From Diplonema japonicum (Eukaryota > Protista > Euglenozoa: Diplonemea), in assembly GCA_964019335.1 (NCBI GenBank), contig OZ025690.1:124001-188000 (forward strand): 64,000 nt of DNA, read 5' to 3'. Of the stretch, positions 18,963-60,900 are shown piece by piece; positions within the stretch are counted from its first letter, which is position 1, and every line of letters begins with the position of its first letter. The translations under genes were made by a program, and so were the position numbers. The notes beneath the pieces are model-generated. The model was given only the letters and a program-made list of their open reading frames with translations. It searched no databases and was not told the DNA's origin.

Positions 18963-20063
18963 TTACCTCCTAGGCGAAGGCGAAGACTGAGAAGCAGCGA
19001 TGACAGCTGCTCGAGGGTAGAGTTTCTCAGCCTCTATCGTCGAAGAAGGGTCGAGGACCTAATGGTTATTTTTATTTAAATTATTCACCCCATTCCCCCC
19101 CCCCCCCCCCCCACTCCCTCACACCTTGATAGGGTAAGAATTCGAAATAACGAAATCCTTTTTTCCATCGAACGAGTCATGCATGATCACCACGTGACGG
19201 ATGGTCTCAACAGAGTCTGACCGTAAGAAGCGCCGCTTGACCTGAGAGCCATCTAGCATCCTGATGCTTAAGGTGGCGATGTTCTCGCCTCCTTCTGGAG
19301 GCTCTTCTCCTAGGATGTCAGCGCTGCGCTGTTTTTCCTCATACAGTTTTGCAACACGGTCCTCCTCCATCTGCCGCTCGAGGAACGCTTCCTGTTCCGC
19401 CTCAAGCCGGGCTTGTTCCGCAGCATCCCGTTCCTCTTGAAGCCGTTCCGCCTCGGCTTTTTCTCGTTCGGAATTTTCCCGGTCGATTCGTTCCGCTTCG
19501 CGTAGTGCGGCTTCCTGTTCCTCTTGGATGCGTCGGCGTGTGTCCTTCTCGAGACGGTCTGCTCTTTGGGAGATCAACAGCGAGCCTGCTGTTGACATGC
19601 AGTTTTGAAGTTGTGCTGCGAGTTTTTGAGGGGACACAGAACCGCCCTCCAACGCGGTTAGCTTTACGGCAGAAGTGTGGGAATAGATTATCCCTAGGAA
19701 TGGGAAGTTGTTTGCCTGAACCGACCAGCTTGCAAAGTAGCCTTCTTTGGTGTGAACGGACGCCGCCCATATGAGGTACTCGTCTTCAGCTACGGTGCAG
19801 AATTCTTCGCTGGCGATGGAAGTGGCGAAGAGTTCGTTGCCGTCGTGGTCCGCGCTCATGAGCAGGACGAGCAGGAATTTGTGTTCCTCCTTCGCCTTCG
19901 CAAGGCCTTCCCTGAAGCTTGCTACGAATGTCAGCCTATCCGCGTATTCTTGTTTTGCCCCGTTTTGTATTAATAGTTCCTTCGAGCCCCCCTGTACTTT
20001 CTTCCCCGTCACCAGCTCGCTCAAACCAATTATCGAAAAAACGCTTTCTGCTATTTTCAGCAT
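18963..20063 (-). CDS. UAS-coiled coil-UBX protein (FAF1/FAF2-like p97 adaptor), 2 exons
   Basis: Exons 20063-19125 and 19058-18963. Splicing completes the UBX domain: SYPIK|VLDPSSTIEAEKLYPRAAVIAASQSSPSPRR*. UAS motif KFLLVLL...YLIWA...FPFL. Confidence 0.85.
19059..19124 (-). other. GT-AG intron, 66 nt, phase 0 (UBX gene)
   Basis: GTGTGA...AATAACCATTAG; removal restores the UBX C-terminus. Confidence 0.85.
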
Positions 20064-20692
20064 TTTTTTTTTTTTTTTTTTTTTACCCGCAAACCCAAAA
20101 AAAAAAAAAAAAAAAAAAAAAAAACAATGTAAATAAGTGTTCCTTTGGTGGTGATATAAAGGGTAAAAGGAGGTGGAATAGAAAAAGAAAGCGTTTGGGA
20201 AAAAAAAAAAAAAAAGGAATAGAAGAAATACTTAAATAAATAGAGGGTGTTTCTTCTTTATTTTTTTTTCTTCTTCTTTTTCCTTTTTCCTCCCCCTGCC
20301 CCCTTCTTACTTTTTCGTTTTGGTTAAAAATTTCTCTGTTAATTTTCTGATGAGGGAAGAGGCGGTGCAATTCACTGCTTGATAGCATGCTCATATTGTT
20401 GGGGTTTTTTTCCTCCCCTTTTTTTCTTCTTCTGATTTTACATTATTTTTTATTTCTTCTTTCCCCCTATCCTTTTTGTTTAACTGGGGTAACGTTTTTT
20501 CTTTTTTTTTTTCTTTTTGTTGCAATCGTTTTGTATTAAATTAAATCATCATTAGAAAAAGTAAGTATTCTCATCACCGTTCTCGCTTTTTTATTGTTCA
20601 AACTTGGTCCCTTTTTCTTTTTTTTATACGAGAAGTGCATACCAAAAGGACTTCTCAGAGAAAAAAAAATAAAGGCTAAACTATAACTTATC

Positions 20693-22057
20693 TCAGTTCT
20701 TGATCTCAGCCATGGCCTCGTCGTAGGTCTTCATCACGATGTCCAGGCAGGTGCGCACCTCCTCCTGGGTGATCGTCAGAGGGGGGGAGAACCTGTGTTT
20801 GTGGTTAATCTTTTCGTGATATAAAACAAACCTGACAATGTGCCCGTGGGTGGGCTTTGCGAGGACACCCTGCTGCGCCATCTTGATGCACCAGTTGTAG
20901 GCGAACTTCCCACCGTCCAGCTCGGGGTCCACCTCAACAGCGTTCAGAAGACCCTTACCGCGCACCACGACGTTCTTGGTCGTGCCCCACTCATTGAGGA
21001 TGGACCTCCACTCCTCCCCGAGGGTGAAGGAGTTCTCCACCATCTTCTCGTCCACAAGGACAGAGAGGGACTCGATCGCCACGGCGGCCGCAACAGGGGA
21101 CCCACCGAAGGTGCTGCCGTGGGTTCCCGGAGTGAAGACGCTCATCACGGGGTTGTCAGCGAGGACACCAGACACCGGGTACAGCCCCCCAGAGAGTGCC
21201 TTCCCCACCACGATCACGTCCGGCTTGATCTCAGCGTAGTCGCTGCAGAAGAGCTTTCCTGTCCTCCCGAACCCGGTCTGCACCTCGTCGCTCATGAGGA
21301 GAACGTTGTGCTTCTTGCACAGGTCGTACGCCCCCTTCAGGTACCCTTCGTCAGGAACGTTCACCCCCGCCTCTCCCTGGATCGGTTCCACAAGGAACCC
21401 CGCCACCTTGTCCCCGACCTCCTCGAACACAGCCTCCAGCTCCTCCAAGCTGTTGTACGAGATAATCTTGAACCCCGGAGTGAAGGGACCGTAGTCCGCG
21501 TAGGCGTCAGGGTCCGTCGAGAACCCGATCACTGTCGTGGTTCTTCCGTGGAAGTTCTCAGCGCACACCACGATGATCGCCTCGTCCTTGGGGATCCCCT
21601 TCACCCTGTAGCCCCACTTCCTTGCCATCTTGATCGCTGCCTCGATCGCCTCCACTCCACTGTTCGCGGGGAGGATGGCGTCGTAGCCAGTCATCTCGGT
21701 GATGAACTTCGCGAACTTCGGGAAGATGTCGTTGTAGTAGGCACGCGAGGACAGGCACAGGTCGTCCAGCTGGTTCTTCATCGCTGCCACGATCCTGGGG
21801 TGGTTGTGGCCCTGGTTCGTCGCGCTGTAGGCACTCAAGAAGTCCGTGTACTCTTTCCCCTCGGGGTCCCACACCTTCGTTCCCTTCGCCTTCGCGAACA
21901 CCACAGGGAGGGGTGCGTAGTTCTTCGCCGCGAAGTCCGACTCCATCTTCATCAGCTCCTGCGAACCCTGCTTGCAGTCCCCCCTCAGGCGGGCAGCCAG
22001 GTTCGGCGCGCGCTTCGCGACCTCTGCGACTCTGCTGCGTGCTGCGGTGATGGCCAT
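20693..22057 (-). CDS. OAT: Ornithine aminotransferase copy 1 (probable mitochondrial presequence), 2 exons
   Basis: Class III aminotransferase motifs DFLSAYSA, FHGRT, EPIQGEAG, DEVQTGFGRTG and GKALSGG. Exons 22057-20832 and 20792-20693. Start inferred from identity with copy 2. Confidence 0.93.
   Translation of the reverse strand: MAITAARSRVAEVAKRAPNLAARLRGDCKQGSQELMKMESDFAAKNYAPLPVVFAKAKGTKVWDPEGKEYTDFLSAYSATNQGHNHPRIVAAMKNQLDDLCLSSRAYYNDIFPKFAKFITEMTGYDAILPANSGVEAIEAAIKMARKWGYRVKGIPKDEAIIVVCAENFHGRTTTVIGFSTDPDAYADYGPFTPGFKIISYNSLEELEAVFEEVGDKVAGFLVEPIQGEAGVNVPDEGYLKGAYDLCKKHNVLLMSDEVQTGFGRTGKLFCSDYAEIKPDVIVVGKALSGGLYPVSGVLADNPVMSVFTPGTHGSTFGGSPVAAAVAIESLSVLVDEKMVENSFTLGEEWRSILNEWGTTKNVVVRGKGLLNAVEVDPELDGGKFAYNWCIKMAQQGVLAKPTHGHIVRFVLYHEKINHKHRFSPPLTITQEEVRTCLDIVMKTYDEAMAEIKN
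20793..20831 (-). other. GT-AG intron, 39 nt, phase 2 (OAT copy 1)
   Basis: GTTTGTTTTATATCACGAAAAGATTAACCACAAACACAG; removal turns IVRFVLYHEKINHKHRFSPPL into the conserved IVRFSPPL. Confidence 0.88.
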
Positions 22058-23123: not shown

Positions 23124-24488
23124 TCAGTTCTTAATCTCAGCCATGGCCTCGTCGTAGGTCTTCATCACGATGTCCAAGCAGGTGCGCACCTCCTCCTGGG
23201 TGATCGTCAGAGGGGGGGAGAACCTGTGGTTGTGGTTAATCTTTTCGTGATATAAAACAAACCTGACAATGTGCCCGTGGGTGGGCTTTGCGAGGACACC
23301 CTGCTGCGCCATCTTGATGCACCAGTTGTAGGCGAACTTCCCACCGTCCAGCTCGGGGTCCACCTCAACAGCGTTCAGAAGACCCTTACCGCGCACCACG
23401 ACGTTCTTGGTCGTGCCCCACTCATTGAGGATGGACCTCCACTCCTCCCCGAGGGTGAAGGAGTTCTCCACCATCTTCTCGTCCACAAGGACAGAGAGGG
23501 ACTCGATCGCCACGGCGGCCGCAACAGGGGACCCACCGAAGGTGCTGCCGTGGGTTCCCGGAGTGAAGACGCTCATCACGGGGTTGTCAGCGAGGACACC
23601 AGACACCGGGTACAGCCCCCCAGAGAGTGCCTTCCCCACCACGATCACGTCCGGCTTGATCTCAGCGTAGTCGCTGCAGAAGAGCTTTCCTGTCCTCCCG
23701 AACCCGGTCTGCACCTCGTCGCTCATGAGGAGAACGTTGTGCTTCTTGCACAGGTCGTACGCCCCCTTCAGGTACCCTTCGTCAGGAACGTTCACCCCCG
23801 CCTCTCCCTGGATCGGTTCCACAAGGAACCCCGCCACCTTGTCCCCGACCTCCTCGAACACAGCCTCCAGCTCCTCCAAGCTGTTGTACGAGATAATCTT
23901 GAACCCCGGAGTGAAGGGACCGTAGTCCGCGTAGGCGTCAGGGTCCGTCGAGAACCCGATCACTGTCGTGGTTCTTCCGTGGAAGTTCTCAGCGCACACC
24001 ACGATGATCGCCTCGTCCTTGGGGATCCCCTTCACCCTGTAGCCCCACTTCCTTGCCATCTTGATCGCTGCCTCGATCGCCTCCACTCCACTGTTCGCGG
24101 GGAGGATGGCGTCGTAGCCAGTCATCTCGGTGATGAACTTCGCGAACTTCGGGAAGATGTCGTTGTAGTAGGCACGCGAGGACAGGCACAGGTCGTCCAG
24201 CTGGTTCTTCATCGCTGCCACGATCCTGGGGTGGTTGTGGCCCTGGTTCGTCGCGCTGTAGGCACTCAAGAAGTCCGTGTACTCTTTCCCCTCGGGGTCC
24301 CACACCTTCGTTCCCTTCGCCTTCGCGAACACCACAGGGAGGGGTGCGTAGTTCTTCGCCGCGAAGTCCGACTCCATCTTCATCAGCTCCTGCGAACCCT
24401 GCTTGCAGTCCCCCCTCAGGCGGGCAGCCAGGTTCGGCGCGCGCTTCGCGACCTCTGCGACTCTGCTGCGTGCTGCGGTGATGGCCAT
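23124..24488 (-). CDS. OAT: Ornithine aminotransferase copy 2, 2 exons
   Basis: Near-identical to copy 1 at offset 2431; exons 24488-23263 and 23223-23124. Confidence 0.93.
   Translation of the reverse strand: MAITAARSRVAEVAKRAPNLAARLRGDCKQGSQELMKMESDFAAKNYAPLPVVFAKAKGTKVWDPEGKEYTDFLSAYSATNQGHNHPRIVAAMKNQLDDLCLSSRAYYNDIFPKFAKFITEMTGYDAILPANSGVEAIEAAIKMARKWGYRVKGIPKDEAIIVVCAENFHGRTTTVIGFSTDPDAYADYGPFTPGFKIISYNSLEELEAVFEEVGDKVAGFLVEPIQGEAGVNVPDEGYLKGAYDLCKKHNVLLMSDEVQTGFGRTGKLFCSDYAEIKPDVIVVGKALSGGLYPVSGVLADNPVMSVFTPGTHGSTFGGSPVAAAVAIESLSVLVDEKMVENSFTLGEEWRSILNEWGTTKNVVVRGKGLLNAVEVDPELDGGKFAYNWCIKMAQQGVLAKPTHGHIVRFVLYHEKINHNHRFSPPLTITQEEVRTCLDIVMKTYDEAMAEIKN
23224..23262 (-). other. GT-AG intron, 39 nt (OAT copy 2)
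   Basis: Same as the copy 1 intron except for one substitution. Confidence 0.88.
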
Positions 24489-31760: not shown

Positions 31761-32681
31761 AACCCCCCTGGACATTATGAAAAAGGTTCGTGCTTTGCGC
31801 TAGCCTTGGTCACCTCGTTCCATGCGTTGTTGTGCTGAGACTGGGACTTCTGCTAGGAACTTGTCTCTTAGGGCAAAAAAAGAAAAAAGAGGGGTAAAAA
31901 AAAAAAAAAAAAACGGAAGAAAAAAAAAAAGAAAAAAAAAAAGGGTGTCGCTTACTAAAGTTCCTGATTTTGTACTTTCTAGCGTCTGTTCATTAAATGT
32001 TGCCGTAAGAGGAAGGAAAAAAAGGGGGGAGGGGATTGAGGAAGAGAACAAGGGGGGGTTAAAGCAGTACTGAACCTAGAGGGCCGACCTAAGGGCGAAA
32101 TGGCTAAGCTTATGTCCATCCCTGCCCACTGTGGTCTACCTTAACAGGCCGCATTAGCTTTTAGTAATCTTTTTTTTTTTTTTTTTTTTTTTTCTAGAAG
32201 GCTGTGCTCAAAAAAGAAAAAAGAGAGAAAAAAACAGGAGAGGAACATCGGCCAGGGGTGAATGGAGGGGAAATAGAAGAAAGAAAGCGTCAACACCACA
32301 TATAAAGAACTCGGCCTCCCCCCCCGCTCCCCTCTTTTTTGTTCTCTTAAACCCTCTGCCAGGGTTTTAAAAAAGAGAAAAAAAAATAAAAGAGACGAAG
32401 GGCCAAAAAGAAAAAGAAAAAGAAAAAAAAAAAGAATCGTATTTTTTTTTTGTTGCTGTTGTCAAGGACAATTTCTTATTTTTTTGTCATCTTTTTTTAA
32501 AATTTTCTTTTTTTTTTTAAAGTTCTTTCTTTGCCCCCCCCCCCCCCCCCTCCCCCCCACCCCACCCCAACCCGCGTGTAAACAAAAAAATCTTTCTTTT
32601 TCTTCATTTTTTTAATTTTATTTTACTTTTGAAAAAAAAAAAAAAAAAAAAAAATACACCTTACTTTTCTTTTTCTTTTTT

Positions 32682-34983
32682 TCACGCCCCAATGACAGGC
32701 TCGGCGGAAACGGCCTTTATTTTTTTTTTTAAAAAAAACAATAAAAAAAAAAAACTCCATACCCCTTCCTTTGGAGACTGCTTGCTCTGGAAGTCCGACT
32801 TGAACATTGAGGCATCGCTCTTTTTCTTCCCGGTGACGGTCTATTGTTGGTTTTTTTTTTTTTTTTTTTTTGTTTTTTTTTCCCCCCCTCCTTACCTCAA
32901 AGACATCCCCAGGACAGAAGAAGAGCGCAGGGTCTTTAGGCTGCCCATTCTCGTGGAAAATAAGAACGAACATAGAATCAATCGCGCTCTGTTTATTAAT
33001 AAAAAAAAAAAGAATAAAAAAAAAAAAAAAAAAAAAAACCCACCCCAACAATACCTCGTACACCGACATAAACAATGATGCCAGCCCGTAGCTGAAAAGC
33101 CCAATCACAATAAGAACAAAAACACCGTTATCGACATTGGGGGCCATGTCGTCGTTCTCAAGGAATAGGTACCCGATGAACACGTTAGCAGCCACCAAGA
33201 ACAACTTCCCGATGAAAAACACAATATCGGAAACAAGCAGCAACGGTGCGAGGTACTCAATGCTCCCAAGGAGAACCGAGATCACCTTGCAGCAAGAACA
33301 CCAGAACCCAGATCCTTCAATGGCCGTCATGATGTAAGCATTGCGTGAAATGTACTGTAAGATCCTCTCGATGTACGCTAAACAACAGTCGACAAGACAC
33401 ATTATACACGCGACTGCCGTACAAGAATTCTTCAATTTCTGCGTCGCTTTCTGTACGATGAACCTTATGAACTGTAGAATGGCCACTAACAAAGATCCGG
33501 TGATCAAACAGCCAAGGTGGTACGCGAACGCCCAGAAGTACCCCTTCCCCCACGCCATGACGCACGGAATTTTTTTTTCGTCGTCGTTCACGTGGGAGTA
33601 GTACCACTGCACAGTCGCAGCCGCGATCACAAAATACCCAATAGAGCTCAACAACCCCATAGTCCACAACCACCCAAACAGGTTATAATACAACATGTTC
33701 CTCGTTGTTGTAAAATCCTTTGGAAGGGTCAGGGTCAGGTTGTACCCCACCTCATCTGCTGCAGCGTTTCCATCAACAATAACCTCGCCATCTTCTCGAA
33801 TGGTCCACACGTAGAGCGAGACGTAAACGATCCATACTAGAAGAGCGAGTGTGCTCAGCCCGGTGATGACGGGGACGAGGAGGAGAGACGGGTCTGATGT
33901 GAGGACCTTCCCGGCCTGTTGGATAATCTCGCAAGCGGCGTTGATCTTCTTGCAGAACCACACCAAGAAGCACAAAAACAGCGCCGCGCAGATCCCGAAT
34001 ATAATGCAGAATGCAAGCCACAGCTTGGCATCGTTGTCGTTGTCCTCGTTGGAGTCGTTGTCCAAACTGTCGTACTTCGTGTAGCAGAAGTATGATGCGA
34101 ACCCGAGCCCTAGCAGAATCAGGATCAAAATGGTCCAGATCAACGGCTTCAAAATCAACCTCAAAAGCAGAACGTAAATAAAAGGAAGGCACAGCGCGAT
34201 GATCCCGCAGTAAATAAGCACGATGTACGCCTCCTCGAGGTCGGAGAGGCCACGCTGAAACCAATTGGTAACACGCGTCACGCCAGGAATGTTATCATAA
34301 GCGCTCTTCAAAGAAGAGGAGATTGCCAGAGACGAGGATGACGGGATGCATCGACGGTAAACACTGTGGGAGTCGTACCAAACATTGAAAGTGTCGGGGA
34401 GGGATGAGGTGTTTGATGACCCGTAGGTGAAGACCTTGTTCAAACTGGCGTAGAGAGATGGGTCGTTCAGAACGTCTTGTGCAGTTCTGCTGTTGAAGCC
34501 GAACTGCGGGCAAGCAGAGACACACACACCTGCAGCAAGCGCACGTTCTGCGTCAAAGTTAGTCATTGACGAATCGGTCAGGTTCTCAGAGGAGTACGGG
34601 ACGGGCAGCCACAGCAATGTGTTGTCATTCCAGCTTTCGTTCTGGTAAGGGAAGTCCCCTGAGGCTTTGTTCTTGATAACTGCGTCGTTCCACCCTGATG
34701 GGGCCGAACCCTTGCCGCACCTGTTCCCCAAGTAGTCGGTCCCGTAGAGCAGCCTCAGCGGGTCGCCCTTGTCGAAGGCGACATCTGCGATGACGAACAT
34801 TCCTATCCAGAAGACAGCGAACACTAGGCACATTGGAGTGTCAGAGTTTATCACCCTTCTGCTCGGGTTCTCGAGCTTCACGCTGTCCGGAAGCCCGATG
34901 GAAGCTGGGTCCCTGTCGTCGCCCGCAAAGGTCTGCACACCCACTTCGTCTGATCCACCGCAGCATCCTCGACCTTTTCCCAT
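32682..34983 (-). CDS. Choline transporter-like protein (SLC44/CTL family), 4 exons
   Basis: GDPLRLLYGTDYLGNRCG, CVSACP, YHLGCLITGSL and NAYIMTAIEG motifs. Exons 34983-33055, 32988-32896, 32840-32763 and 32714-32682; ends ...AVSAEPVIGA*. Confidence 0.88.
32715..32762 (-). other. GT-AG intron, 48 nt, phase 0 (CTL intron 3)
   Basis: GTATGG-T-run-A-run-TAAAG; followed by an 11-codon terminal exon. Confidence 0.7.
32841..32895 (-). other. GT-AG intron, 55 nt, phase 0 (CTL intron 2)
   Basis: GTAAGG-G-run-A-run-CCAACAATAG; removal opens a 26-codon exon. Confidence 0.8.
32989..33054 (-). other. GT-AG intron, 66 nt, phase 0 (CTL intron 1)
   Basis: GTATTG...TAATAAACAG; removal gives SVYE|SAIDSMF, the conserved CTL C-terminal motif. 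Confidence 0.88.
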
Positions 34984-35008
34984 TTTCTTTTTTTTTTTTT
35001 TTACGCCG

Positions 35009-35045
<37 letters not shown>

Positions 35046-35087
35046 GGCGGCAAGGGCGTGGGGGGGGGGGGAAAAAAAAAATTGATT

Positions 35088-36416: not shown

Positions 36417-36855
36417 TTTTTAATTCTTTTTTCCCCCCCTTGTCCGGGCTGTGCGTCAGTGTGTGATCGGGGACTTAATATAGCTTAAGTCTTAATTCAG
36501 TGTAATGAACCAAGGTACAGCAGGACCAAGGTACGATAGCTACGTTGCAACGTCACTGCGGTAACGCCGAAAATCCACAACCATCGGGCTGAGGGGCCCG
36601 ACCACCAGGGCTCCATCTACGTAACGAGAGGGAGCGCAAGGGCGAAAGAGGAGGTATGTTAAAACAGGCAACGGGCCCATGCCACGGTACAGCGAGTACG
36701 TGCAGGCCATGAAGCACAGTGGATGATTCCAGCCTCGTCTGGAACGAATGATCCCAAAGGATGGAAGGAACCAGCGGGAAAGACGGCTCAACAAAGCACG
36801 AGAGAAAAGGAAAAAGCCCCTTAAGATGGAAGGGTCAATTTTCAGTGCATGCACT

Positions 36856-36888
<33 letters not shown>

Positions 36889-37098
36889 GAGTAAAAAAAA
36901 AAAAAATTAACAAAAGAAGATTGCTTCTCTAACAAAAAAAAAAACCCCCCCCATTCCCCTCTTTCGCAAATTGCACGCTAAACACTTTCCCCATTAGGTT
37001 ATAAAATAAAGAGAGTCTGTGGATGGGAAGGGGGCGGAAGAAAAAAAAAAACCCCCCCGTTTTTTTTTTTTTCTTCTTTTTTTTTATTAAACATTTTT

Positions 37099-37546
37099 CT
37101 ATTCCAAAGGGCTCATCATCATCCTAACAAGGTTCCCATCGCCGTCTCTAGTAACCTTTTTTTTTTTTTTTTTTTTTTTTTTTCTTATTCCCCTTCAAAT
37201 GGGATACCTGTGTGACCAAGTTTACACTGACGATTTCCTCCTTGCCAGAGCACAGCACGCACTTCAAGATGCCCATTGATAGCAACCGCCTCTCCTTCAC
37301 CCCCTCGGTGTTCACGGCAGGGATCTTGAGATCTACAGTGTGGTTGCCCGCAGAATAGTCACAGGGGCCAACTGAGCACAGCTGTATCACATGTCTTTTG
37401 TTGGTATAGTCAGCCTCATATTGTACCTCCCATGTAACATCGCTGACTCCTTTGCTGTCGAACTGAAACGTAATAACAACAGGGACATCGAAAGTGCAGT
37501 TGTTGGGTTCAATGAGACAGCTTTGGAGGTCGATGACTTCTCCCAT
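37099..37546 (-). CDS. Divergent ASF1-fold (histone chaperone-like) protein, 2 exons
   Basis: Spacing N..F..P...F....DVTWEVQY...G.H...P follows ASF1. Exons 37546-37208 and 37155-37099; ends VTQ|VTRDGDGNLVRMMMSPLE*. Confidence 0.6.
37156..37207 (-). other. GT-AG intron, 52 nt, phase 0, with A27 running into the acceptor G
   Basis: GTATCCCATTTGAAGGGGAATAAG-A27-G. Confidence 0.82.
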
Positions 37547-37780: not shown

Positions 37781-37811
<31 letters not shown>

Positions 37812-37958
37812 CAAATTGAATAGCCCCTTCCCTTCAAATTTCACCGTTATAATATTCCTGTACCGAAACAGGGGATGTCTTGCCCTGTGTCGGCTGCAAA
37901 GCGTTTCATGGGTATTGCTACTGGGGCGGGGTTTGGAAGAGGCGTCATGGGCACCACC

Positions 37959-44405: not shown

Positions 44406-46211
44406 TCAAATAAAATCTGTAGCAACCGAACTCCTGGACCGTGTAGGGGACGTAACCGGAGCAAACCTGGCATAGGAGGTATCGCAGCTCTGGGCCAGGG
44501 GGCTCGTCGCAGGGGAAAGAACCTGCCTTTTCCGTTCCAGCGTCTTATCCCGACAAGTTTTGCTAATCTCATACAGCGCAGCCTGTATTATAAAAAAAAA
44601 AAAAATTAAAAATACCTCAATCCCTGCCAGCCTCCCCTCAACAGCGGCGATCCTACGACTGCTCAACGCAGCCACGGTATCTATCTTTTCCGTAACAGTC
44701 TTGGTGCATTGAAACAAAAGCGCTTCAAAATCGACCGGCGGACCATTGTTAGGTGACGGGTAAGGGCAATTGACCTTACCATGCTTTGGCGAACCTGAAA
44801 GAGAAGCTGCCGGGCTCGTGGAATGAGACACCGCATCGCAAGTAGAAGGGAGAAGAGTACGAGGCATATCAATAATGGATTTTCGATGCTCGTCCAACGC
44901 AGCGAATCGCAGTGCTTCAACAAACAACATACAAAGATGATTCCTCCTCTGCCTCACCTGGTCTTCAACAAGAAGCTCTTGAAACGCCCCGGTAAGAATT
45001 GTAACCGGAAATCCCACAACTATCATCCCGGTCAACATTGTCATCCCACCAACAAGCTTTCCAACAGGTGTTACAGGTACTTGGTCACCATATCCGACAG
45101 ATGTTATTGTAACAATCGACCACCACAGTGTTTCCGGGATAGATTGAAATGCGATTCGTTCACCTGCATCAGAATAGGAAGAGTTGTCATGGCGAATCCA
45201 GTAACGGGTTTCGTGGTTGAAGCTCGACCCGCCTCGTTCGGCGTAGAACATGAATGAGGAGGTTAACGCCATAACCATGACAAGAACAAGAACGAGCCAC
45301 CATAGAAAAGGTGCTGAGCGTTTCAATGCCAGACCGAGCATGGTGAGGCAGCTCGCCTTCCCAAGCTGCAGGACCTTTACAACTCGGAACGATCGAACCA
45401 ACACTCGGACTACCCTAAGCGAAACAAGCGCTTCGCTTTCCGACACGTTCACCTCTAAAAGCGATGTGTAGTACGGTAGAATAGTAATCAGATCAACCCA
45501 CGTGCCCATGTCCGTCCACAAGTTTTTACAGGTTCTGTCGGAGTCGCCTTTCTTTACATACGTAGCGCAATACGAGAGGAATTCAACTGTAAAAATCGCA
45601 ACGCAAATTCCTTCAAGAGCCCATGTTGCTGGGTATCCCGGTTGCGAGTTGAAGTTTTGGGCTTCAGGGATGGTCTCGACCATGAGAACCACGAGAGATG
45701 TTACAATGGCAACTTGTGAAAGAATTCGGAGCGACACGGATAGAATAATTGCCCAGGTCCGGCTTCCGTTGTATCGAGAGCCTTTGAAGCCCCACATTAC
45801 CCAGACCCACTCTCGTATGGTGTCGGGTTCCAGTGTGTTGGTTAAGGCAGCGGCGTAGTTTATGTAAGCTGCTAGTTCTGACACATCTATGACACCTGAG
45901 CCGTCGGAATCGATGTCGGCGAAGACGCATTCGGAGTCTGCGAGGTCGTTAGAACGCGGGAAGAGGATTTCCCATAGCTTTCTGAAGCCGACGCGGTCGA
46001 TGTCGCCTTCGATGCAGACGCACCATCTTTCGAGCTTTAGGATTAAGTTTGCTAGTTCTACCTTGGCGTCCGTCTTGAACAGAGTCAGCCTTCGCCTTGG
46101 AGAGGAGGATGGACACTCTTCTTCAACATTGTCCACCGTCGTGCTACCTACTTCCACCATCTCCCCTACATCTTCTACAAAGGTCAGGCGTCTCTCGGTT
46201 TTCTTCGCCAT
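44406..46211 (-). CDS. Voltage-gated (Shaker-like 6TM) K+ channel with N-terminal EF-hand, 2 exons
   Basis: Pore WWSIVTITSVGYGD; S4 LRVVRVLVRSFRVVK; EF-hand DIDSDGSGVIDVSEL. Exons 46211-44616 and 44582-44406. Confidence 0.9.
   Translation of the reverse strand: MAKKTERRLTFVEDVGEMVEVGSTTVDNVEEECPSSSPRRRLTLFKTDAKVELANLILKLERWCVCIEGDIDRVGFRKLWEILFPRSNDLADSECVFADIDSDGSGVIDVSELAAYINYAAALTNTLEPDTIREWVWVMWGFKGSRYNGSRTWAIILSVSLRILSQVAIVTSLVVLMVETIPEAQNFNSQPGYPATWALEGICVAIFTVEFLSYCATYVKKGDSDRTCKNLWTDMGTWVDLITILPYYTSLLEVNVSESEALVSLRVVRVLVRSFRVVKVLQLGKASCLTMLGLALKRSAPFLWWLVLVLVMVMALTSSFMFYAERGGSSFNHETRYWIRHDNSSYSDAGERIAFQSIPETLWWSIVTITSVGYGDQVPVTPVGKLVGGMTMLTGMIVVGFPVTILTGAFQELLVEDQVRQRRNHLCMLFVEALRFAALDEHRKSIIDMPRTLLPSTCDAVSHSTSPAASLSGSPKHGKVNCPYPSPNNGPPVDFEALLFQCTKTVTEKIDTVAALSSRRIAAVEGRLAGIEVFLIFFFFIIQAALYEISKTCRDKTLERKRQVLSPATSPLAQSCDTSYARFAPVTSPTRSRSSVATDFI
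44583..44615 (-). other. GT-AG intron, 33 nt, phase 0 (K+ channel)
   Basis: GTATTTTTAA-T-run-ATAATACAG; removes VFLIFFFFIIQ from a coiled coil (LAGIE|AALYEI). Confidence 0.78.
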
Positions 46212-46231: not shown

Positions 46232-46371
46232 TTTCTTTTTTTTTTTCTTTCTCACTTTTTTTTTTTCTTTTTTGGAGAAATGAGGGAGGGAATATTTAAA
46301 GAAATACAGGGGGGGAAGGGGGGGGGGGGCTTTAAAGAATTAAAAAACCCTCGTTGCTGTTTTTTTATTTA

Positions 46372-48582: not shown

Positions 48583-48631
<49 letters not shown>

Positions 48632-49004
48632 CACCATACTTTTCAGCCATAAAGGTAGGCTGACGCAGCACAACACACTTCCATGGGGTAATGCAGCCCA
48701 TATCTCTTTGAAACAGGACGGTTGACTGGATCCCCAGTGATTTACTCTTCGCGACAATGTCCTTCGCGGCCCGAGAGACTGCCCCGTTCATGAGTGCGAC
48801 GGCGCTGTCCAATGTTTCCAGTTTCGCGTGTACTACGGGGGCCTCCTTCCCCTTTCTGCTCAACACCACCTCGCACATCTCGAACCACGTGTTTTGCTCG
48901 TACGCTATTTTCCACCGTTTCGCGATGCGTCTTGCAAACGCCCCTGTTTCAGTGTCGCACCAGTGCAGGATCCGAGCGACCACTTCCATTGGAATCTCAT
49001 TCAT
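48498..49004 (-). CDS. Small F-box-domain protein, 2 exons
   Basis: MNEIPMEVVARILHWCD...ARRIAKRWK is an F-box pattern. Exons 49004-48635 and 48583-48498; the start is uncertain. Confidence 0.65.
48584..48634 (-). other. GT-AG intron, 51 nt, phase 1, almost pure poly(A)
   Basis: GTGAATTT-A42-G; removes a poly-Lys run in frame. Confidence 0.72.
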
Positions 49005-49860: not shown

Positions 49861-52800
49861 TCACATGTATTCTGTTGGCTTCTGTGCGTCCCTCGTTATG
49901 CTAACAGGCCTCTCCCCGCATGGCGGGAAGGGTGCACTGATTTCGTTGTGAGAGTCAGCTATGTAAGCTTCCTGTGTAAGAATTGTACAAATAAAAAAAA
50001 AAAAGAACAGAAGTTGTTTCTCCCTTCATTCATACCGCATCTTCGTCACGCAGGGCCCTCTCCCCGATGCGCATGAAGACCTGCTCCAAAGAGGTCTCGT
50101 TGATAGAGTAGTCGGTGATGCCTATATTTTTTTGTTTTTTTGTTTTTTTTATTTTTTTGTTTTATATGTTTTACACACCAATCTTCCTGTTGTCCTCCAC
50201 GAACTGGAACATTGCGGAGAGGGAGGATTCCTTCTTGAGGACCTGGTAGGTGAGCCTCTGCTGGGTGTCTTCTGTGAGGAGGGCGTTGGCCCATTTTTCA
50301 GCGATGAGCTCCTTCGCGGCCGCTTCCGCCTCCTTGTTCTTCAGCTTCACGGTGAGCTCGTAGGAGTCGCCGAGGGACTGCTTCAGCTGGGACAGGCTTC
50401 CGAGACACTGGAGCCTCCCGTCGACCATGATGGTGACGCGGTGCTGCAGGCGTGCCAGCCCCTCGATCTCCTCGAGGTGGTGCGTCGTCAGCACCACGCT
50501 GAGGTGGAGCTCCGTGATGGCCTTCTCCAGAGCGCCCCACAAGCTGCGTCGGGCCACCGGGTCCATCCCCGCCGACGGCTCGTCCAAGAAGACCACCGGT
50601 GGTCCTCCCATCAAGGCCACCGCCACCGACAGCTTCCGACGGTTCCCCCCGCTCAGGGCCTTCGCCATCTTCTTCCGATGCGGGAGGAGCCCCAAGCCCC
50701 CCAACAGCAGCTCCACGCTCGGCTGCACCTGGTGCGACGGGATCCCTCGCAGGCACGCGAACAGACGCAGGTGCTCCTCGCAAGTCATGTGGTCCAGCAG
50801 CGCGTCGAACTGCGGGCAGAACCCCAAGCTCTGCCGTGCCAGCTGCGCCTCCTCCACCACGTCGTACCCCTCCCCCGTCGCAGGGTTCTCTCCGATAAAG
50901 GCCCGTCCCTCGCTCGGGGCGAACTCCCCGCTCAGCACGCTCAGCGTCGTCGTCTTCCCCGCCCCGTTCGTCCCGAGGAACGCGAACAGCTCCCCGGACC
51001 TCACCCCGAAGCTCAGGTCCGCCACTGCCACCTTCGGCTTCGACATGTTCCCCGCAGGAGGCCACACCTTCCGAAGCCGCTGCACAGTCACGTAGTCTCC
51101 CTTCCTCCCTTTCCCCTCCAGTACCTCCTTCGCGTGCTCATCCACTGCAGCGTCTCGGTAGAAAGGCGTGTCCTTCGTCGTCCACTTCGACTCACTTGTC
51201 TTCTCGTTGAAGTAGTACGTCTTCCCCGAGAAGTCGTCCGTGCATGCCAACCACTCCCCACGGCGTTGCTGCACTGCCGACCCGTCCCGCTCAAGCTTCC
51301 CATCGTCTTCGTGATATTTCGACGACTTCTCCAACAGTGGCGTCCCCTCCAGCTCTGTGTAGTTGTTCTCCCGCCACCTGCACCGCACTAGTCTCTTTCG
51401 CAGCCAGGGCACTTCGATCAGACACGTGATGAGAAAGTAGATAGGCGCCAGCACAACCATGTACGTGAGGTCCACCGTGACTATCTCCCAGTCAAAGGCG
51501 CCAGGGGTGGTGACTGATCGACCCAAGGCATTCACAAGGTCACGCATGGAGAGGGAGATGATGCCCTCACCAAGGCAGAAGGAGGGAACAATGCGGTAGA
51601 AGTACTTCAGATACTTGTTGTAGTCCTTAGTGGAGTCGATGAAGTCGAGGATGTTGGAGGCAATGACCAAGATGAAGCCTGCGATGAAGTTGAAGATCAT
51701 GACCGCATTCTGTGCGGCAGTGTGCGAACTGAACAGGAACGACAGCAGGTATGAGTTCGCAATGGAAGAAATACCATACAACAGGAACAGAAGGAAAGAC
51801 GCCATGAAGGTCTCGAACGACCCTACGAACTCACCCCTATCGTCACCGAAGAAGACGATAAAGGCAAGGAACATGGTCCCGAGGTAGGCAAGAAGGTCGA
51901 AGGTGAACGAGCTTGCCCAGTACGCGCCCATGTGGACACCGGAAACAACCTGCACGTGTTTTGCTTTGCACTCCCGCTCCTTGACGATGAAGGACACGAA
52001 GTTTGACGGAATGAAGGTGAAGGGAATCATGATGAAGATGCCTGTGATGACCACCTGAAGGGACTCGATCACCTTCTGCTCGTAGTCACTGAAGGGCAAG
52101 GGGTGGTTCCTAGTCACGATAGTAGCATCTATGTTTGTGGTATTACGAAGCGCAGCGTTCCTGATAGCGGAGACCACAGCAGGGAAGGCATGGATGAAGC
52201 TTGCGTTGTTGAAGACAGAGGCTGTGAGTGACGTGATGCGCTCGATTCGCTGGTCCGGGAGGGCAATGCCTGCACCACGTTGCTCATTTTTGTGCCCATT
52301 GTAGTCCTCCATCATCCATTCTGACAATGTCGACCCGTTCACCACACTGCTGTTCACCTCGTTGATGTTCTGCAGCTCGTAGTCCTCAGGCCTGAAGTGA
52401 CATATGCTTGGTGCCTCGCACCCGACATCGAAGAAAGAACTCACTGGCGTAAATGGCATATTCGCCGGTCGGTCAAACACCCCTGAGTCAAGCGTCAACG
52501 AACTCTGACTCGGGGGCCCCAACCTCCCCAGAAGAAGCGCAATCAGAATGAACACCACAGGAAGCACGAACTGGAAGCACAGCGTCCTGGGATCCCTCTT
52601 AGCACAGTTGTACCTCTTCCTAATCAGCCCGAAGTACTGTTCTATGTACAGATGAATTCCTTCTTTTGCCTTGTCATGCGCACCGGCGTTCACAATGCTG
52701 TACAAGTTCCCAAAGTTGAAATCCGACGGAGCGTGTCCTTTCTCGTGCTGTACATTCTCGATATCATGGTCCACGGCTTGCACTTCCCTTGTGGCAACAA

Positions 52801-57432: not shown

Positions 57433-57955
57433 AAGAAAGAAAAAAGCGCACAAAAGCAGGAAGGAAAGGGGTGGCCATGCTGCACTCTTTTTTTTTTTTT
57501 TTTTCTCTTTTTTTTTTGCCTTCATTTAGTTGCGTTGACCGATTTTTAATACTGGGGGGACAAGGAATCTGTTCTATACCACAGTGCCGCCAGCACAAAT
57601 TTACTTTGAGCATTTCTTTTTTTTTTCTCTTTTTTTTTTTCTTTGTCCCGCTTTATGTTTTCTTTCTCGTTTTTTTTTTTTTTTTCTTTTCTTTCAGTTC
57701 CTTTTTCCTTTTTCTTTTACTCTATAACCCCTCCGACCCACCAGAGGGCAAAGCAGCAAATAAATAAATAAAAAAAATAAAAATAAAAAAAAACAGGTAA
57801 GGGGGGCAAGTAGAGGAGGAAAGATGAGGCGCGAAAAGGGAGAGAACTGTGCGATCCCTCTTTTCCAAAGGAATGAGTTTTCCTCTTCTTTACATTACAT
57901 TAACGAAGAGCGAGAAATAAATTCGAAGGGGGGGAAAAAAATGAGGGGGCACCAC

Positions 57956-60900
57956 TTAACTCAAGGGATCGCCTGCAGGGGGTGTGGGGGGGTATAGGTT
58001 TGCTGCGTCGTTGTTCTTGTAAGCTTCCTGTGTAAGAATTGTACAAATAAAAAAAAAAAAAGAACAGAAGTTGTTTCTCCCTTCATTCATACCGCATCTT
58101 CGTCACGCAGGGCCCTCTCCCCGATGCGCATGAAGACCTGCTCCAAAGAGGTCTCGTTGATAGAGTAGTCGGTGATGCCTATATTTTTTTGTTTTTTTGT
58201 TTTTTTTATTTTTTTGTTTTATATGTTTTACACACCAATCTTCCTGTTGTCCTCCACGAACTGGAACATTGCGGAGAGGGAGGATTCCTTCTTGAGGACC
58301 TGGTAGGTGAGCCTCTGCTGGGTGTCTTCTGTGAGGAGGGCGTTGGCCCATTTTTCAGCGATGAGCTCCTTCGCGGCCGCTTCCGCCTCCTTGTTCTTCA
58401 GCTTCACGGTGAGCTCGTAGGAGTCGCCGAGGGACTGCTTCAGCTGGGACAGGCTTCCGAGACACTGGAGCCTCCCGTCGACCATGATGGTGACGCGGTG
58501 CTGCAGGCGTGCCAGCCCCTCGATCTCCTCGAGGTGGTGCGTCGTCAGCACCACGCTGAGGTGGAGCTCCGTGATGGCCTTCTCCAGAGCGCCCCACAAG
58601 CTGCGTCGGGCCACCGGGTCCATCCCCGCCGACGGCTCGTCCAAGAAGACCACCGGTGGTCCTCCCATCAAGGCCACCGCCACCGACAGCTTCCGACGGT
58701 TCCCCCCGCTCAGGGCCTTCGCCATCTTCTTCCGATGCGGGAGGAGCCCCAAGCCCCCCAACAGCAGCTCCACGCTCGGCTGCACCTGGTGCGACGGGAT
58801 CCCTCGCAGGCACGCGAACAGACGCAGGTGCTCCTCGCAAGTCATGTGGTCCAGCAGCGCGTCGAACTGCGGGCAGAACCCCAAGCTCTGCCGTGCCAGC
58901 TGCGCCTCCTCCACCACGTCGTACCCCTCCCCCGTCGCAGGGTTCTCTCCGATAAAGGCCCGTCCCTCGCTCGGGGCGAACTCCCCGCTCAGCACGCTCA
59001 GCGTCGTCGTCTTCCCCGCCCCGTTCGTCCCGAGGAACGCGAACAGCTCCCCGGACCTCACCCCGAAGCTCAGGTCCGCCACTGCCACCTTCGGCTTCGA
59101 CATGTTCCCCGCAGGAGGCCACACCTTCCGAAGCCGCTGCACAGTCACGTAGTCTCCCTTCCTCCCTTTCCCCTCCAGTACCTCCTTCGCGTGCTCATCC
59201 ACTGCAGCGTCTCGGTAGAAAGGCGTGTCCTTCGTCGTCCACTTCGACTCACTTGTCTTCTCGTTGAAGTAGTAGACGTTGTGCTCGTCGTCCGTGCACA
59301 CCAGCCACTCCCCACGGCGCTTCAGGACCGAGTCGTTGTCCCGCTCAAGCTTCCCGTCGTCCTCATCGTAGACGTCATCCACGAGAGGTGTCTCCTCGTC
59401 CGCTAGCTTTACCTCGTCACCACCCCAGCGGCACTGCAAGAACCTCCTGCGCATCCAAGGCACCTCAAGGGTGCATGTAGCAAGGACAAAGATCGGCGAC
59501 ATACAAATCATGTATGTGAGGTCTACTCCTGTGACGTTCCAGTCGAAAGGGCTGGGGATGTGCGAGGTGTTGACCGCCTTCGCCACACCGATGCTTGACA
59601 GCTTGATGATGCCCTCACCAAGGCAGTACGAGGGGACAAGGCGGTATATGTATTTCAGGGTGCCGTTCGCACTCTTCGTGGAGTCGATGTAGTCGAGAAT
59701 CTGTGCAGAGATGACCAAGATGAAGCCTGCGATGAAGTTGAAGATCATGACCGCATTCTGTGCGGCAGTGTGCGAGCTGAACAGGAACGACAGCAGGTAT
59801 GAGTTCGCAATGGAGGAGATACCATACAACAGGAACAGAAGGAACGTGGCGAAGAAGCTCTCGAACGACCCGATGAACTCCTCTCTGCTGTCACCGAAGA
59901 AGACGATAAAGACAAGGAACATGGTGCAGATGTAGGCAAGAAGGTCGAAGGTGAACGAGCTTGCCCAGTACGCGCCCATGTGGACACCGGAAACAACCTG
60001 CACGTGTTTTGCTTTGCACTCCCGCTCCTTGACGATGAAGGACACGAAGTTTGACGGAATGAAAGTGAAGGGAATCATGATGAAGATGCCTGTGATCACA
60101 ACTTGGATGGAGTTAATGAGCTTTTGGGCATAGTCACTGAAAGGCAAGGGGTGGTTACGAGTGATGATCTCACCAGCGATGTGGCCGCGTCTGAGAATTG
60201 CGTTGGAGAAAGCACTAACAACACCAGGGAAGGAGTGGATGAAGGTGGCGTTGGTGAAGAGAAGACTGACGTTCCGGTCGTCACCTGACATCGTGGCCTG
60301 CGTGAAATTATCAGGGTAGGCAATGGCGCAGGGGCGCTGTGCCTTGTGGCTGTTATAGTTATCCAACATCCACTCTGACATCGTCGTCCCGTTCACCACA
60401 CTGCTATTCATGGCATGGAGGTTCTGCAGCTCGTAGTCTGTCTTGTCAAACGGGCACACCCCAGTGCAGTCCGCAAACAAGTCTGACTCCTGCTCGGACA
60501 CGTAAAGCAACTTCGCCGGTCTATCGAATAAGTTAGCACCCATCATCAAACTGGGCTGGTTCGGTGGCCCGAGCCTTCCTAACAACAGCGCAAGCAAAAT
60601 GAACACCACAGGAAGCACGAACTGGAAGCACAGCGTCCTGTGGTCTCTCTTCGCACAGTGAAACCTCTTTACAATCAGCCCGAGGTACTGCTCCATGTAC
60701 AGTTTCGTTCCCTTTTTCGACTGCTCGTCCGCCTGCTTGTCTCCCAAGATGCTGTACAGATTGCCGAAGTTGAAGTCGGTCGGTGCCTGTCCCTTCACCT
60801 GCGGTGTTTGCTGCTCTCCAGCAACAAGGTCCTCCTCGCTGTCGGCGTTCAGTGCGATCTTCATGAAGATCTCCTCCAAGGTGGTCACGCTTACTCCGAA

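What the first reader, a model, noticed from the sequence alone, without database searches (positions are those of the whole stretch)
18963..58235. Micro-introns confined to the extreme 3' end of genes
Seen: 13 GT-AG introns of 33-66 nt (10 independent positions) in the UBX, OAT x2, CTL, ASF1-like, K+ channel, F-box and ABCA x2 genes. Every one lies within about 205 spliced coding nt of the stop codon (last exons 33-177 nt). The first exons are up to 5.8 kb, and I saw no introns in the 2.9-3.7 kb ORFs. Established: intron-poor eukaryotes usually keep introns near the 5' end, attributed to 3'-biased cDNA-mediated loss. Inference: this genome shows the opposite polarity. Possible causes are cis-splicing coupled to 3'-end formation, selection against internal acceptors that SL trans-splicing could hijack, or an intron-loss route that spares the 3' end. 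This is my best candidate for an undescribed system here.
Basis: partly seen in the sequence, partly recalled or inferred. Interest (0 to 1): 0.9.

Follow-up and report, generated by a model that had tools for sequence, protein, structure and literature searches.

The report
Tiny introns crowd gene 3' ends
The 13 tiny introns just before the stop codons in this stretch of the marine protist Diplonema japonicum are real, and samples from elsewhere in the genome show introns piling up towards gene ends, the reverse of the 5' pile-up usual in intron-poor eukaryotes, although they are not strictly confined there.

Summary
Observation confirmed. Nine of the ten positions are backed by RNA or homology. 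The 'F-box' intron rests on sequence signals only.

Interpretation partly supported. The window is Diplonema japonicum, whose 41-nt-median, A-rich GT-AG introns were published in 2025. Intron position was not discussed in the papers I could read. 'Confined to the extreme 3' end' fails genome-wide: Pfam-validated internal introns exist in Thi4 and 3-hydroxyacyl-CoA dehydrogenase genes, and chaperonin and HSP70 genes carry introns throughout.

Reversed polarity holds in every wider sample I could take:
- In an unrelated 200-kb stretch, 53 predicted introns fall in CDS deciles [1,1,1,3,7,3,7,9,12,9].
- Dynein heavy-chain genes run 3,100-4,650 codons unbroken. Their last 310 codons hold at least 15 micro-intron breaks, against 1-3 in the N-terminal domain.
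- ABCA paralogues and HECT versus myosin-head domains agree.

Several terminal intron positions are shared with other diplonemid genomes, so the pattern is old. The cause is unresolved. I favour weaker selection against introns near the stop.

Two other first readers of this scan noted the same polarity on other pieces of this genome.

The parts
19059..19124 (-). UBX-gene intron, 66 nt, GTGTGA..(G18)..CATTAG; the last exon is 18963-19058 (31 codons plus stop)
   Evidence: P0165 (100% identical, 344 aa) joins ...SYPIK to VLDPSS.... The UBX Pfam match is cut at the ORF end. P0166 of another species runs off at the same site.
20793..20831 (-). OAT copy 1 intron, 39 nt, in frame and stop-free, so hidden inside the ORF
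   Evidence: The same segment as in copy 2, apart from one base near the acceptor, aligns as a 13-residue insert against solved OAT-family structures. Called by my gene finder.
23224..23262 (-). OAT copy 2 intron, 39 nt, in frame
   Evidence: The 5viu_A alignment reads GHIVR[fvlyhekinhnhr]FSPPL against GNIIR-------------LAPPL.
32989..33054 (-). CTL intron 1, 66 nt, T-tract body
   Evidence: Absent from the X6 spliced contig and from transcript protein P0121. The Choline_transpo match is cut at 311/326. The position is shared with ENA genome ORF P0124.
32841..32895 (-). CTL intron 2, 55 nt, A-tract body
   Evidence: Absent from the X6 spliced contig and from P0121.
32715..32762 (-). CTL intron 3, 48 nt; the last exon is 32682-32714 (10 codons plus stop)
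   Evidence: P0121 ends ...SPKEG|AVSAEPVIGA. The X6 contig leaves the genome at 32762 with 44 letters to go.
37156..37207 (-). ASF1-like gene intron, 52 nt, A-tract body
   Evidence: The X1 contig (related organism) stops matching at 37206, which is the donor allowing for a 2-nt ambiguity, and has 119 further letters. Called by my finder. The Pfam ASF1 hit is weak, E 0.007.
44583..44615 (-). K+ channel intron, 33 nt, in frame, T-tract body
   Evidence: Orthologues P0152 and P0153 lack the 11 encoded residues. Called by my finder. Absent from the P0153 genome ORF.
48584..48634 (-).
   Evidence: Sequence signals and gene finder only. No RNA or homology support, and no Pfam F-box.
50122..50178 (-). 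ABCA copy 1, intron 1, 57 nt
   Evidence: R1_ABCA1 is cut at 64/75. Orthologue C-termini continue into the next exon. The position is shared with ENA genome ORFs P0003, P0005, P0006 and P0007.
49972..50035 (-). ABCA copy 1, intron 2, 64 nt
   Evidence: Same intron as in copy 2. Downstream of EAY this copy's last exon diverges, because the duplication ends about 10 nt after the acceptor.
58179..58235 (-). ABCA copy 2, intron 1, 57 nt
   Evidence: As for copy 1.
58028..58092 (-). ABCA copy 2, intron 2, 65 nt
   Evidence: The exon after it reads EAYKNNDAANLYPPTPPAGDPLS, matching the conserved diplonemid tail (E/Q)AY...PAPP. ENA genome ORFs P0008-P0013 and P0015 run off at this site.

Best explanation
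These are ordinary U2-type spliceosomal micro-introns of Diplonema japonicum, built as G|GTATG-like donor, 30-70 nt homopolymer- or A-rich body, and YAG acceptor. They are removed from mature mRNA.

Their placement in the last 205 coding nt is the local extreme of a polarity seen in every wider sample of this genome. Micro-intron density is highest in the last ~1 kb before the stop and falls with distance from it. Long genes therefore consist of a giant intron-free first exon plus one to three tail introns, while short genes look more evenly interrupted.

Shown here: the introns are real; the polarity holds in independent samples; several terminal positions are shared with other diplonemid genomes, so the pattern is old.

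Inferred (about 0.35-0.4): the polarity reflects position-dependent purifying selection. An intron that is sometimes retained or mis-processed costs less the closer it lies to the stop. Weak, odd-looking introns therefore persist, and new ones are tolerated, near the 3' end. Upstream, only well-signalled introns survive.
For: Reality of the introns.

Species and known intron type: 62.5-Mb genome matching the published 62.3-Mb assembly (PMC13598402); PMC12621601 gives the intron properties.

Polarity:
- Contig C1, 200 kb: 53 introns in 27 of 66 genes, deciles [1,1,1,3,7,3,7,9,12,9], KS p 5e-5, gene-level t-test p 3e-5.
- Same stretch: 0.67 introns per kb in the last 250 nt against 0.12 per kb in the first 250 nt.
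- My finder recalls implanted introns at least as well near the 5' end (80-93%) as near the 3' end (68-88%).
- Decoy splice dinucleotides give only 2-4 false short-last-exon calls against 27 real ones.
- Only 2 of 83 genes have unexplained coding sequence upstream of the predicted ATG.
- Dynein heavy chains: the N-terminal DHC_N1 domain has 1-3 breaks in 15 genes, inside ORFs of 3,142-4,648 aa. The C-terminal Dynein_C domain has at least 15 breaks with 35-70 nt gaps in 26 loci. AAA_9 and D6 are intermediate.
- About 18 ABCA paralogues are single ORFs of 1,689-1,913 aa, with breaks only beyond about 0.6 of the protein.
- HECT about 0.5-0.7 breaks per kb against myosin head about 0.16 per kb.

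Age: genome ORFs of other diplonemids run off at the ABCA-1, ABCA-2 and CTL-1 positions, and probably at the UBX position.

Selection gradient: the A content of the 3' tract falls with distance from the stop (rho -0.38, p 0.009), pyrimidine content rises (rho 0.35, p 0.02), and donor score tends to rise (rho 0.28, p 0.06). The skew is the same for homopolymer-bodied and plain introns.
Against: - The de novo sample covers 0.4% of the genome and rests on my own gene finder. Introns longer than 150 nt were not modelled.
- CCT and HSP70 genes show no clear skew. Localised positions split 4 below 0.5 against 8 above, and 7 against 7. HSP70 copies carry introns at 0.13, some 3-4 kb long.
- The window (10 of 10 within 205 nt) is far more extreme than C1 (8 of 53), so there is regional or gene-class heterogeneity that I cannot explain.
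- For the causal part, tail introns in dynein genes interrupt the conserved Dynein_C domain, and a retained intron there wastes a 4,500-residue protein. That fits a cheap-failure argument poorly.
- No intron-retention or mis-splicing rates were measured.
- The signal gradient would also arise from two intron age classes.
Confidence: 0.6

Rival explanations
1. 3'-biased intron gain. New introns enter genes preferentially in their last kilobase. Possible routes are reverse splicing plus reverse transcription primed at the poly(A) end, insertion of poly(A)-tailed retroposon stubs, or filler DNA at repaired breaks. Gain has outpaced loss in the diplonemid lineage.
For: - Density depends on distance from the stop with a scale of about 1 kb, as expected for a process anchored at the mRNA 3' end.
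- Intron bodies are 47% A, and A-runs outnumber T-runs 15 to 8.
- The K+ channel intron is absent from an orthologous genome ORF, and the CTL introns are absent from P0126's genome.
- The exon context NAG|GT is enriched.
- Sverdlov et al. 2004 inferred preferential gain in 3' portions of genes (cited in PMC3488318).
I did not test that here.
Against: - Four terminal positions are shared between diplonemid genera, so many tail introns are not recent.
- The skew is equal for introns without homopolymer bodies.
- No repeated intron family was found among 64 introns, and junction repeats are short.
- cDNA from normal spliced mRNA should delete 3' introns far more often than rare reverse-spliced RNA adds them. 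This is an inference from the classical model (PMC10639083).
Confidence: 0.25
2. Functional coupling to 3'-end formation. A last intron close to the poly(A) site helps define the terminal exon and promotes cleavage and polyadenylation in polycistronic transcripts, so tail introns are kept by positive selection.
For: - Last exons are tiny (33-177 nt).
- The CTL transcript contig ends about 10 nt after the stop, in an A-rich run, so the acceptor lies about 50 nt from the mRNA end.
- Terminal positions are conserved across genera.
- Coupling of last-intron splicing to polyadenylation is known in animals (my own knowledge).
Against: - Most genes have no intron at all: 10 of 17 in the window and 39 of 66 in C1.
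- Five of 14 dynein genes with both ends identified are single ORFs.
- The pattern is a gradient over 1-3 kb, not a peak at the last exon.
- Orthologues and paralogues lacking the intron exist (P0017, P0126).
Confidence: 0.12
3. Avoidance of spliced-leader hijack or cistron splitting. An internal cis acceptor can be mistaken for an SL-addition and polyadenylation boundary. The damage grows with the length of coding sequence downstream, so acceptors survive only near the stop.
For: - Same-strand polycistron-like arrays.
- SL trans-splicing is established in diplonemids (PMC10161547).
- Intron bodies resemble miniature intergenic spacers.
- Introns are nearly absent from the first 250 nt of the CDS.
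Against: - Introns far from the stop are the ones with pyrimidine-rich, trans-acceptor-like tracts, while tail introns are A-rich. That is the opposite of what I would expect from this idea.
- HSP70 genes keep introns at 0.13 of the protein.
- Other SL-using organisms such as nematodes show no such polarity (my own knowledge).
- No SL-joined reads at internal acceptors were examined.
Confidence: 0.08
4. Artefact. The tail introns are spurious GT..AG pairs used to extend ORFs past their true stops, or the pattern is a chance or ascertainment effect of this window.
For: Any ORF end can be extended on paper through some GT..AG pair. One of the ten positions ('F-box') has no independent support, and its donor is ambiguous.
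Against: Nine of ten positions are confirmed by transcripts, a spliced contig or homology. The polarity recurs in independent, homology-based samples on more than 20 contigs.
Confidence: 0.03

Closest known systems
Canonical micro-introns of Diplonema japonicum (Thakur et al., RNA 2025, PMC12621601)
   Same: Same species and same intron population. The paper reports 98% GT-AG, median 41 nt, (G)/GTATG donor, an A-rich tract in place of the polypyrimidine tract, and a CAG acceptor. My set gives 33-68 nt, GTATG in about 60%, CAG in 31 of 48, and 47% A in the body.
   Different: The paper's main text and discussion say nothing about where introns lie within genes. Its supplements are not held in this library. 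The positional polarity is the new element.
5'-biased intron distribution of intron-poor eukaryotes, attributed to 3'-biased reverse-transcriptase-mediated loss
   Same: A marked positional bias in a relatively intron-poor genome (about 0.8 micro-introns per gene in my sample).
   Different: The direction is reversed. The first 30% of the CDS is almost empty and the last 30% holds more than half of the introns. The classical account is summarised in PMC10639083 section 28.
[quoted passage not shown]
   Same: It proposes that new introns arise preferentially in 3' portions of genes, which would give this polarity if gain dominated.
   Different: That was an inference from comparisons among intron-rich model organisms, not a genome whose standing distribution is 3'-skewed. 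Here several tail introns are old. I could read only the citation, not the paper.
Introner or transposon-derived intron families (Micromonas and others) and the retrotransposon-tail intron noted earlier in this scan
   Same: Short introns in a genome with active retroelements; A-rich bodies.
   Different: There are no repeated sequence families among 64 introns and no clear target-site duplications.
Nonconventional introns of euglenids and hemistasiid diplonemids
   Same: Same phylum; short introns.
   Different: All introns here are GT-AG, and their ends do not pair (at most 7 of 12 complementary positions).

Membership tests
U2-type (GT-AG) spliceosomal introns | GT at the 5' end and AG at the 3' end | tested here: met
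   All 13 introns. One search tallied the acceptor over 48 strong-donor introns of window and C1 (CAG 31, AAG 9, TAG 8).
U2-type (GT-AG) spliceosomal introns | Precise removal from mature RNA | tested here: met
   CTL x3: X6 spliced contig and transcript protein P0121. UBX: P0165. Removal is inferred from homology for OAT, ABCA x2 and the K+ channel.
U2-type (GT-AG) spliceosomal introns | 5' splice site complementary to U1 (GTATG/GTAAG-like), preceded by exon G | tested here: met
   GTATG[CTGA] in 30 of 48. The exon -3..-1 is GAG, AAG or CAG in 25 of 48.
U2-type (GT-AG) spliceosomal introns | Polypyrimidine tract and branch-point motif upstream of the acceptor | tested here: not met
   For tail introns, the 3' tract of introns within 300 nt of the stop is 55% A and only 38% pyrimidine. 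The source paper finds YTRAY in only 13.9% of D. japonicum introns. This departure is a known trait of the species.
U2-type (GT-AG) spliceosomal introns | Dependence on the spliceosome | not testable with these tools
   A complete U2-type snRNP set is reported for the species (PMC12621601 abstract).
Published D. japonicum micro-intron population | Length around 41 nt, A-rich tract, CAG acceptor | tested here: met
   33-66 nt in the window. My set has median about 47 nt, 47% A in the body, and CAG in 65%.
5'-biased intron distribution typical of intron-poor genomes | Excess of introns in the first part of the CDS | tested here: not met
   C1 deciles [1,1,1,3,7,3,7,9,12,9]. Dynein N-terminal against C-terminal domains.
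Introner-like (repeated, mobile) introns | Many introns share sequence, often with target-site duplications | tested here: not met
   3 weak hits among 64 introns, from all-against-all blastn with the low-complexity filter on. In-register junction repeats are mostly 1-4 nt.
Euglenid-type nonconventional introns | Non-GT-AG borders and base-paired intron ends | tested here: not met
   All are GT-AG. End complementarity is no better than 7 of 12.

The most novel reading that the evidence does not exclude
Diplonemids have a genome-wide, evolutionarily stable reversed intron polarity, produced by a turnover mechanism that differs from classical 3'-biased cDNA-mediated loss. Candidates are a gain process anchored at the mRNA 3' end, or a loss process that spares the last kilobase and is tied to polycistronic transcription with SL trans-splicing. 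Either would make them a natural counter-example for testing how intron positions are set.
Probability: 0.3. Interest if true: 0.85.

Novelty: new variant of a known kind. Interest (0 to 1): 0.7.

Why it matters
The 5' pile-up of introns in intron-poor genomes is the main empirical support for reverse-transcriptase-mediated intron loss. A free-living eukaryote with the opposite pattern shows that the rule is not general. Here genes of up to 13.9 kb run unbroken and then carry one to three micro-introns in the last few hundred bases.

Diplonemids are also well placed for working out the cause. Six or more genomes and transcriptomes already exist for the group. Intron numbers among them range from about 10,000 to about 98,000. 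Their sister group, the kinetoplastids, has almost no introns. Gain and loss by position could therefore be reconstructed directly.

There is a practical consequence as well. Gene callers that stop at the first in-frame stop will clip the true C-termini of a substantial share of D. japonicum proteins (7 of 17 genes in this window).

Tried and rejected
- A first intron caller based on 30-codon coding scores was too noisy and missed known introns. I replaced it with a dynamic-programming gene finder.
- Allowing introns up to 400 nt merged neighbouring genes across short spacers, so calls were limited to 25-150 nt. Long introns are therefore not covered.
- Decoy splice dinucleotides as a pure null failed at first, because decoys latch onto real frame breaks. 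Only decoy calls that do not overlap real ones were used.
- The raw density of GTATG along genes shows little gradient, because Tyr-codon contexts dominate.
- A hidden in-frame candidate in the 35091-36416 gene was rejected, because the RNA contig is continuous there.
- No D. japonicum transcript protein was found for ABCA or the K+ channel.
- Aldedh and AMP-binding searches gave almost no introns and so little information.
- Rfam and tRNA scans of the window were blank.
- Literature searches for a reported 3' bias in diplonemids or other protists found nothing.
Exons were searched and compared one by one by reference.

Full report
WHAT THE WINDOW IS

All large ORFs lie on the minus strand, separated by homopolymer-rich spacers. 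The window is contig C43:124001-188000 of a 62.5-Mb, 132-contig genome. Earlier notes of this scan name it Diplonema japonicum. That fits the published 62.3-Mb assembly of strain YPF1604 (PMC13598402). It also fits a 100%-identical Trinity transcript protein in EukProt.

THE OBSERVATION

There are 10 independent positions, because the OAT and ABCA genes are tandem duplicates. Lengths are 33-66 nt, all are GT..AG, and all lie 30-201 spliced coding nt before the stop.

Independent support, gene by gene:
- CTL (choline-transporter-like). A 2,197-nt contig of run X6 lies on 34972-33055, 32986-32896 and 32839-32762 with continuous contig coordinates. Introns 1 and 2 are therefore absent from that molecule, and it leaves the genome exactly at the donor of intron 3. 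Transcript protein P0121 (710 aa) ends ...SVYE | SAIDSMFVLIFHENGQPKDPALFFCPGDVFE | TVTGKKKSDASMFKSDFQSKQSPKEG | AVSAEPVIGA. That is my four exon translations in order.
- UBX. P0165 (344 aa, 100% identical) ends ...SYPIK | VLDPSSTIEAEKLYPRAAVIAASQSSPSPRR. The UBX Pfam match stops at profile position 56 of 82, at the ORF end.
- OAT. Solved homologues align with a 13-residue gap exactly over the 39-nt in-frame segment.
- ABCA intron 1. The R1_ABCA1 domain is cut at 64 of 75 at the ORF end. Orthologues continue LG|ITDYSINETSLEQVF, which is the next exon.
- ABCA intron 2. Orthologues continue RDED(V/K)(E/Q)AY...PAPP. The exon after the acceptor in the 58-kb copy reads EAYKNNDAANLYPPTPP.
- K+ channel. 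Two orthologues lack the 11 residues encoded by the 33-nt segment.
- ASF1-like. A contig of a related organism stops matching at the donor.
- 'F-box'. Only consensus signals support this one. A better donor, GTATGG, lies 5 nt upstream, and Pfam sees no F-box.

No other intron turned up in the window's 17 genes. RNA contigs run unbroken over the 1.9-kb CTL first exon and over the neighbouring methyltransferase gene. Under uniform placement, the chance that all ten independent introns fall within 205 nt of the stop is about 8e-10.

WHAT WAS ALREADY KNOWN

Thakur et al. (RNA 2025, PMC12621601) reported 10,131 RNA-seq-supported introns in D. japonicum. They are 98% GT-AG with a median of 41 nt, a (G)/GTATG donor, an unusual A-rich tract and a CAG acceptor. 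The micro-introns are therefore not a new system.

That paper's text and discussion do not address intron position within genes. Nor do the D. papillatum genome paper and its supplements. The general literature describes a 5' bias, explained by 3'-biased reverse-transcriptase-mediated loss (PMC10639083).

IS THE POLARITY GENOME-WIDE?

I wrote a small gene finder. It scores dicodon coding potential against a third-order background. It allows GT-AG introns of 25-150 nt and uses splice-site matrices and a length prior trained on the data. On the window it recovers 11-12 of the 13 known introns.

On C1 it predicts 66 genes, all on one strand, with 53 introns in 27 of them. By decile of the CDS the counts are [1,1,1,3,7,3,7,9,12,9]. 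The mean relative position is 0.68 (KS against uniform p 5e-5; gene-level t-test p 3e-5). With strong donors only, the deciles are [0,0,0,2,4,3,6,6,11,6]. Density is 0.67, 0.67 and 0.54 per kb in the three bins covering the last 1 kb. It is 0.12, 0.24 and 0.27 per kb in the corresponding bins from the start.

Controls:
- Real introns implanted into intronless genes are recalled at least as well near the 5' end (80-93%) as near the 3' end (68-88%).
- Decoy splice dinucleotides give 2-4 false short-last-exon calls against 27 real ones.
- Only 2 of 83 genes have unexplained coding sequence upstream of the predicted start.

Pfam continuity across exons validates internal introns. Thi4 exons match profile positions 1-81 and 82-235. 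The 3-hydroxyacyl-CoA dehydrogenase exons match 3HCDH_N 1-76 and 79-161, then the C-terminal domain. Introns are therefore not confined to the extreme 3' end.

HOMOLOGY-BASED SAMPLES ACROSS THE WHOLE GENOME

These do not depend on my gene finder. The own-genome search reports matches exon by exon.

Dynein heavy chains give a test within the same genes.
- The N-terminal DHC_N1 domain (1.7 kb) is one unbroken match in 12 of 15 genes. Its ORFs run 3,142-4,648 codons.
- The C-terminal Dynein_C domain (0.93 kb) shows at least 15 breaks in 11 of 26 loci. The gaps of 35-70 nt are typical of micro-introns.
- Examples: on C16 an ORF of 4,607 codons is followed by a break about 50 codons before the end; on C24, 4,587 codons and then a break about 80 codons before the end; on C89 and C41, 4,150 and 4,012 codons followed by two breaks each.
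- Domains 1.2-3 kb from the stop are intermediate.
- Five of the 14 genes with both ends identified are intron-free single ORFs.

Other families agree. About 18 ABCA paralogues are single ORFs of 1,689-1,913 codons, with breaks only beyond about 0.6 of the protein. HECT domains, always C-terminal, have about 0.5-0.7 breaks per kb, against about 0.16 per kb for N-terminal myosin heads.

The exceptions are short, highly expressed chaperone genes. CCT genes carry introns at about 0.31-0.85 of the protein. HSP70 genes carry them at 0.13-0.80, including 3-4 kb introns at 0.13.

A density that depends on distance from the stop, with a scale of roughly 1 kb, reconciles these results. Genes of 1.6-2 kb look nearly even, while 6-14 kb genes look extreme. 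It does not fully explain why this window is more extreme than C1.

AGE

Proteins predicted as plain ORFs from other diplonemid genome assemblies in ENA deviate from the conserved sequence exactly at intron sites.
- ABCA-1 position: P0003, P0005, P0006, P0007.
- ABCA-2 position: P0008-P0013 and P0015. P0017 has neither intron.
- CTL-1 position: P0124. P0126 is continuous through all three CTL sites.
- UBX position: probably P0166.
- The K+ channel intron is absent from P0153.

Tail introns are therefore often older than the split of diplonemid genera, with continuing presence/absence turnover. The same 'giant first exon plus tail intron' layout of ABCA genes occurs in other species.

CAUSE

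This could not be settled.

Introns close to the stop have A-rich 3' tracts (55% A within 300 nt of the stop), are slightly longer, and have somewhat weaker donors. Those more than 1 kb upstream are pyrimidine-rich (59%) with stronger donors. The skew is the same for homopolymer-bodied and plain introns. There are no repeated intron families and no end pairing.

I read this as a gradient in the strength of selection on splicing quality: failure is cheaper near the stop, so weak introns persist there. I give that reading about 0.35-0.4.

The rivals are 3'-biased gain (0.25), a role in 3'-end formation (0.12), and avoidance of spliced-leader hijack (0.08). For the last, the tract composition runs against what I would expect from it. 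The dynein case, with tail introns inside a conserved domain of a very costly protein, is awkward for my preferred reading.

LIMITS

- Read laying was allowed once, on 6,000 nt, and returned contigs rather than reads.
- Spliced models were never joined for a search; exons were handled one by one by reference.
- Two other first readers of this scan recorded the same polarity on other pieces of this genome (s1-865616 and s1-864642). I treat those as leads, not as evidence.

Noticed in passing
window 37620-37730: A ~100-nt element between the ASF1-like gene and the gene upstream has summed contig depth of 10^4-10^6 in all four runs, against 10^1-10^3 for its neighbours, and many contigs break or join there. 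It looks like a very high-copy dispersed repeat with short inverted ends (AACTAGTT).
   Followed up: no
window 46360-47960: A ~1.6-kb insertion between the K+ channel gene and the 'F-box' gene is bounded by near-identical inverted repeats (CTCCCGGACGGAAAAATGTCCG...). It is probably a DNA transposon, with no clear minus-strand coding.
   Followed up: no
window 49861-50035 versus 57956-58092: The two ABCA copies are identical through the second tail intron and about 10 nt into the last exon, then diverge completely. Only the 58-kb copy keeps the conserved EAY...PP tail. The other copy has acquired a new 36-codon ending at the duplication boundary.
   Followed up: partly
window 34972-35090: The spacer between the stop of the RsmB/F-type methyltransferase gene (35088) and the CTL start codon (34983) is only 105 nt, mostly A and C runs. 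Laid pieces stop at 35090 and 34972 in X2, X5 and X6, and at 34972 in X1 (which reaches only 35223 on the other side), partly because of repeat masking.
   Followed up: no
G000 contigs C16, C24, C61, C81, C109, C9: Dynein heavy-chain genes are single open frames of 4,557-4,648 codons (up to 13.9 kb) with no intron or only a tail intron. These are among the longest intron-free first exons seen here.
   Followed up: partly
G000:C19:339683-344779, 367194-372287, 423519-428818: Three HSP70 copies carry a 3-4 kb intron after profile position 77, while two neighbouring copies (278-284 kb) have about 30-nt gaps at the same position. The same intron position therefore exists in micro and giant form among tandem paralogues.
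   Followed up: no
window 32500-38499 (run X1): Run X1, labelled as a different organism, carries contigs 95-99% identical to the coding parts, with mostly transition-type differences. A close relative or strain with RNA data exists and could serve for comparing intron presence and absence.
   Followed up: no
C1:100001-300000 (L009-L028) and window: The A content of the 20 nt before the acceptor falls with distance from the stop, while pyrimidine content and donor score rise. Intron phase is strongly skewed to phase 0 (34 of 53).
   Followed up: partly
Both its gene model and its name are uncertain.
   Followed up: partly
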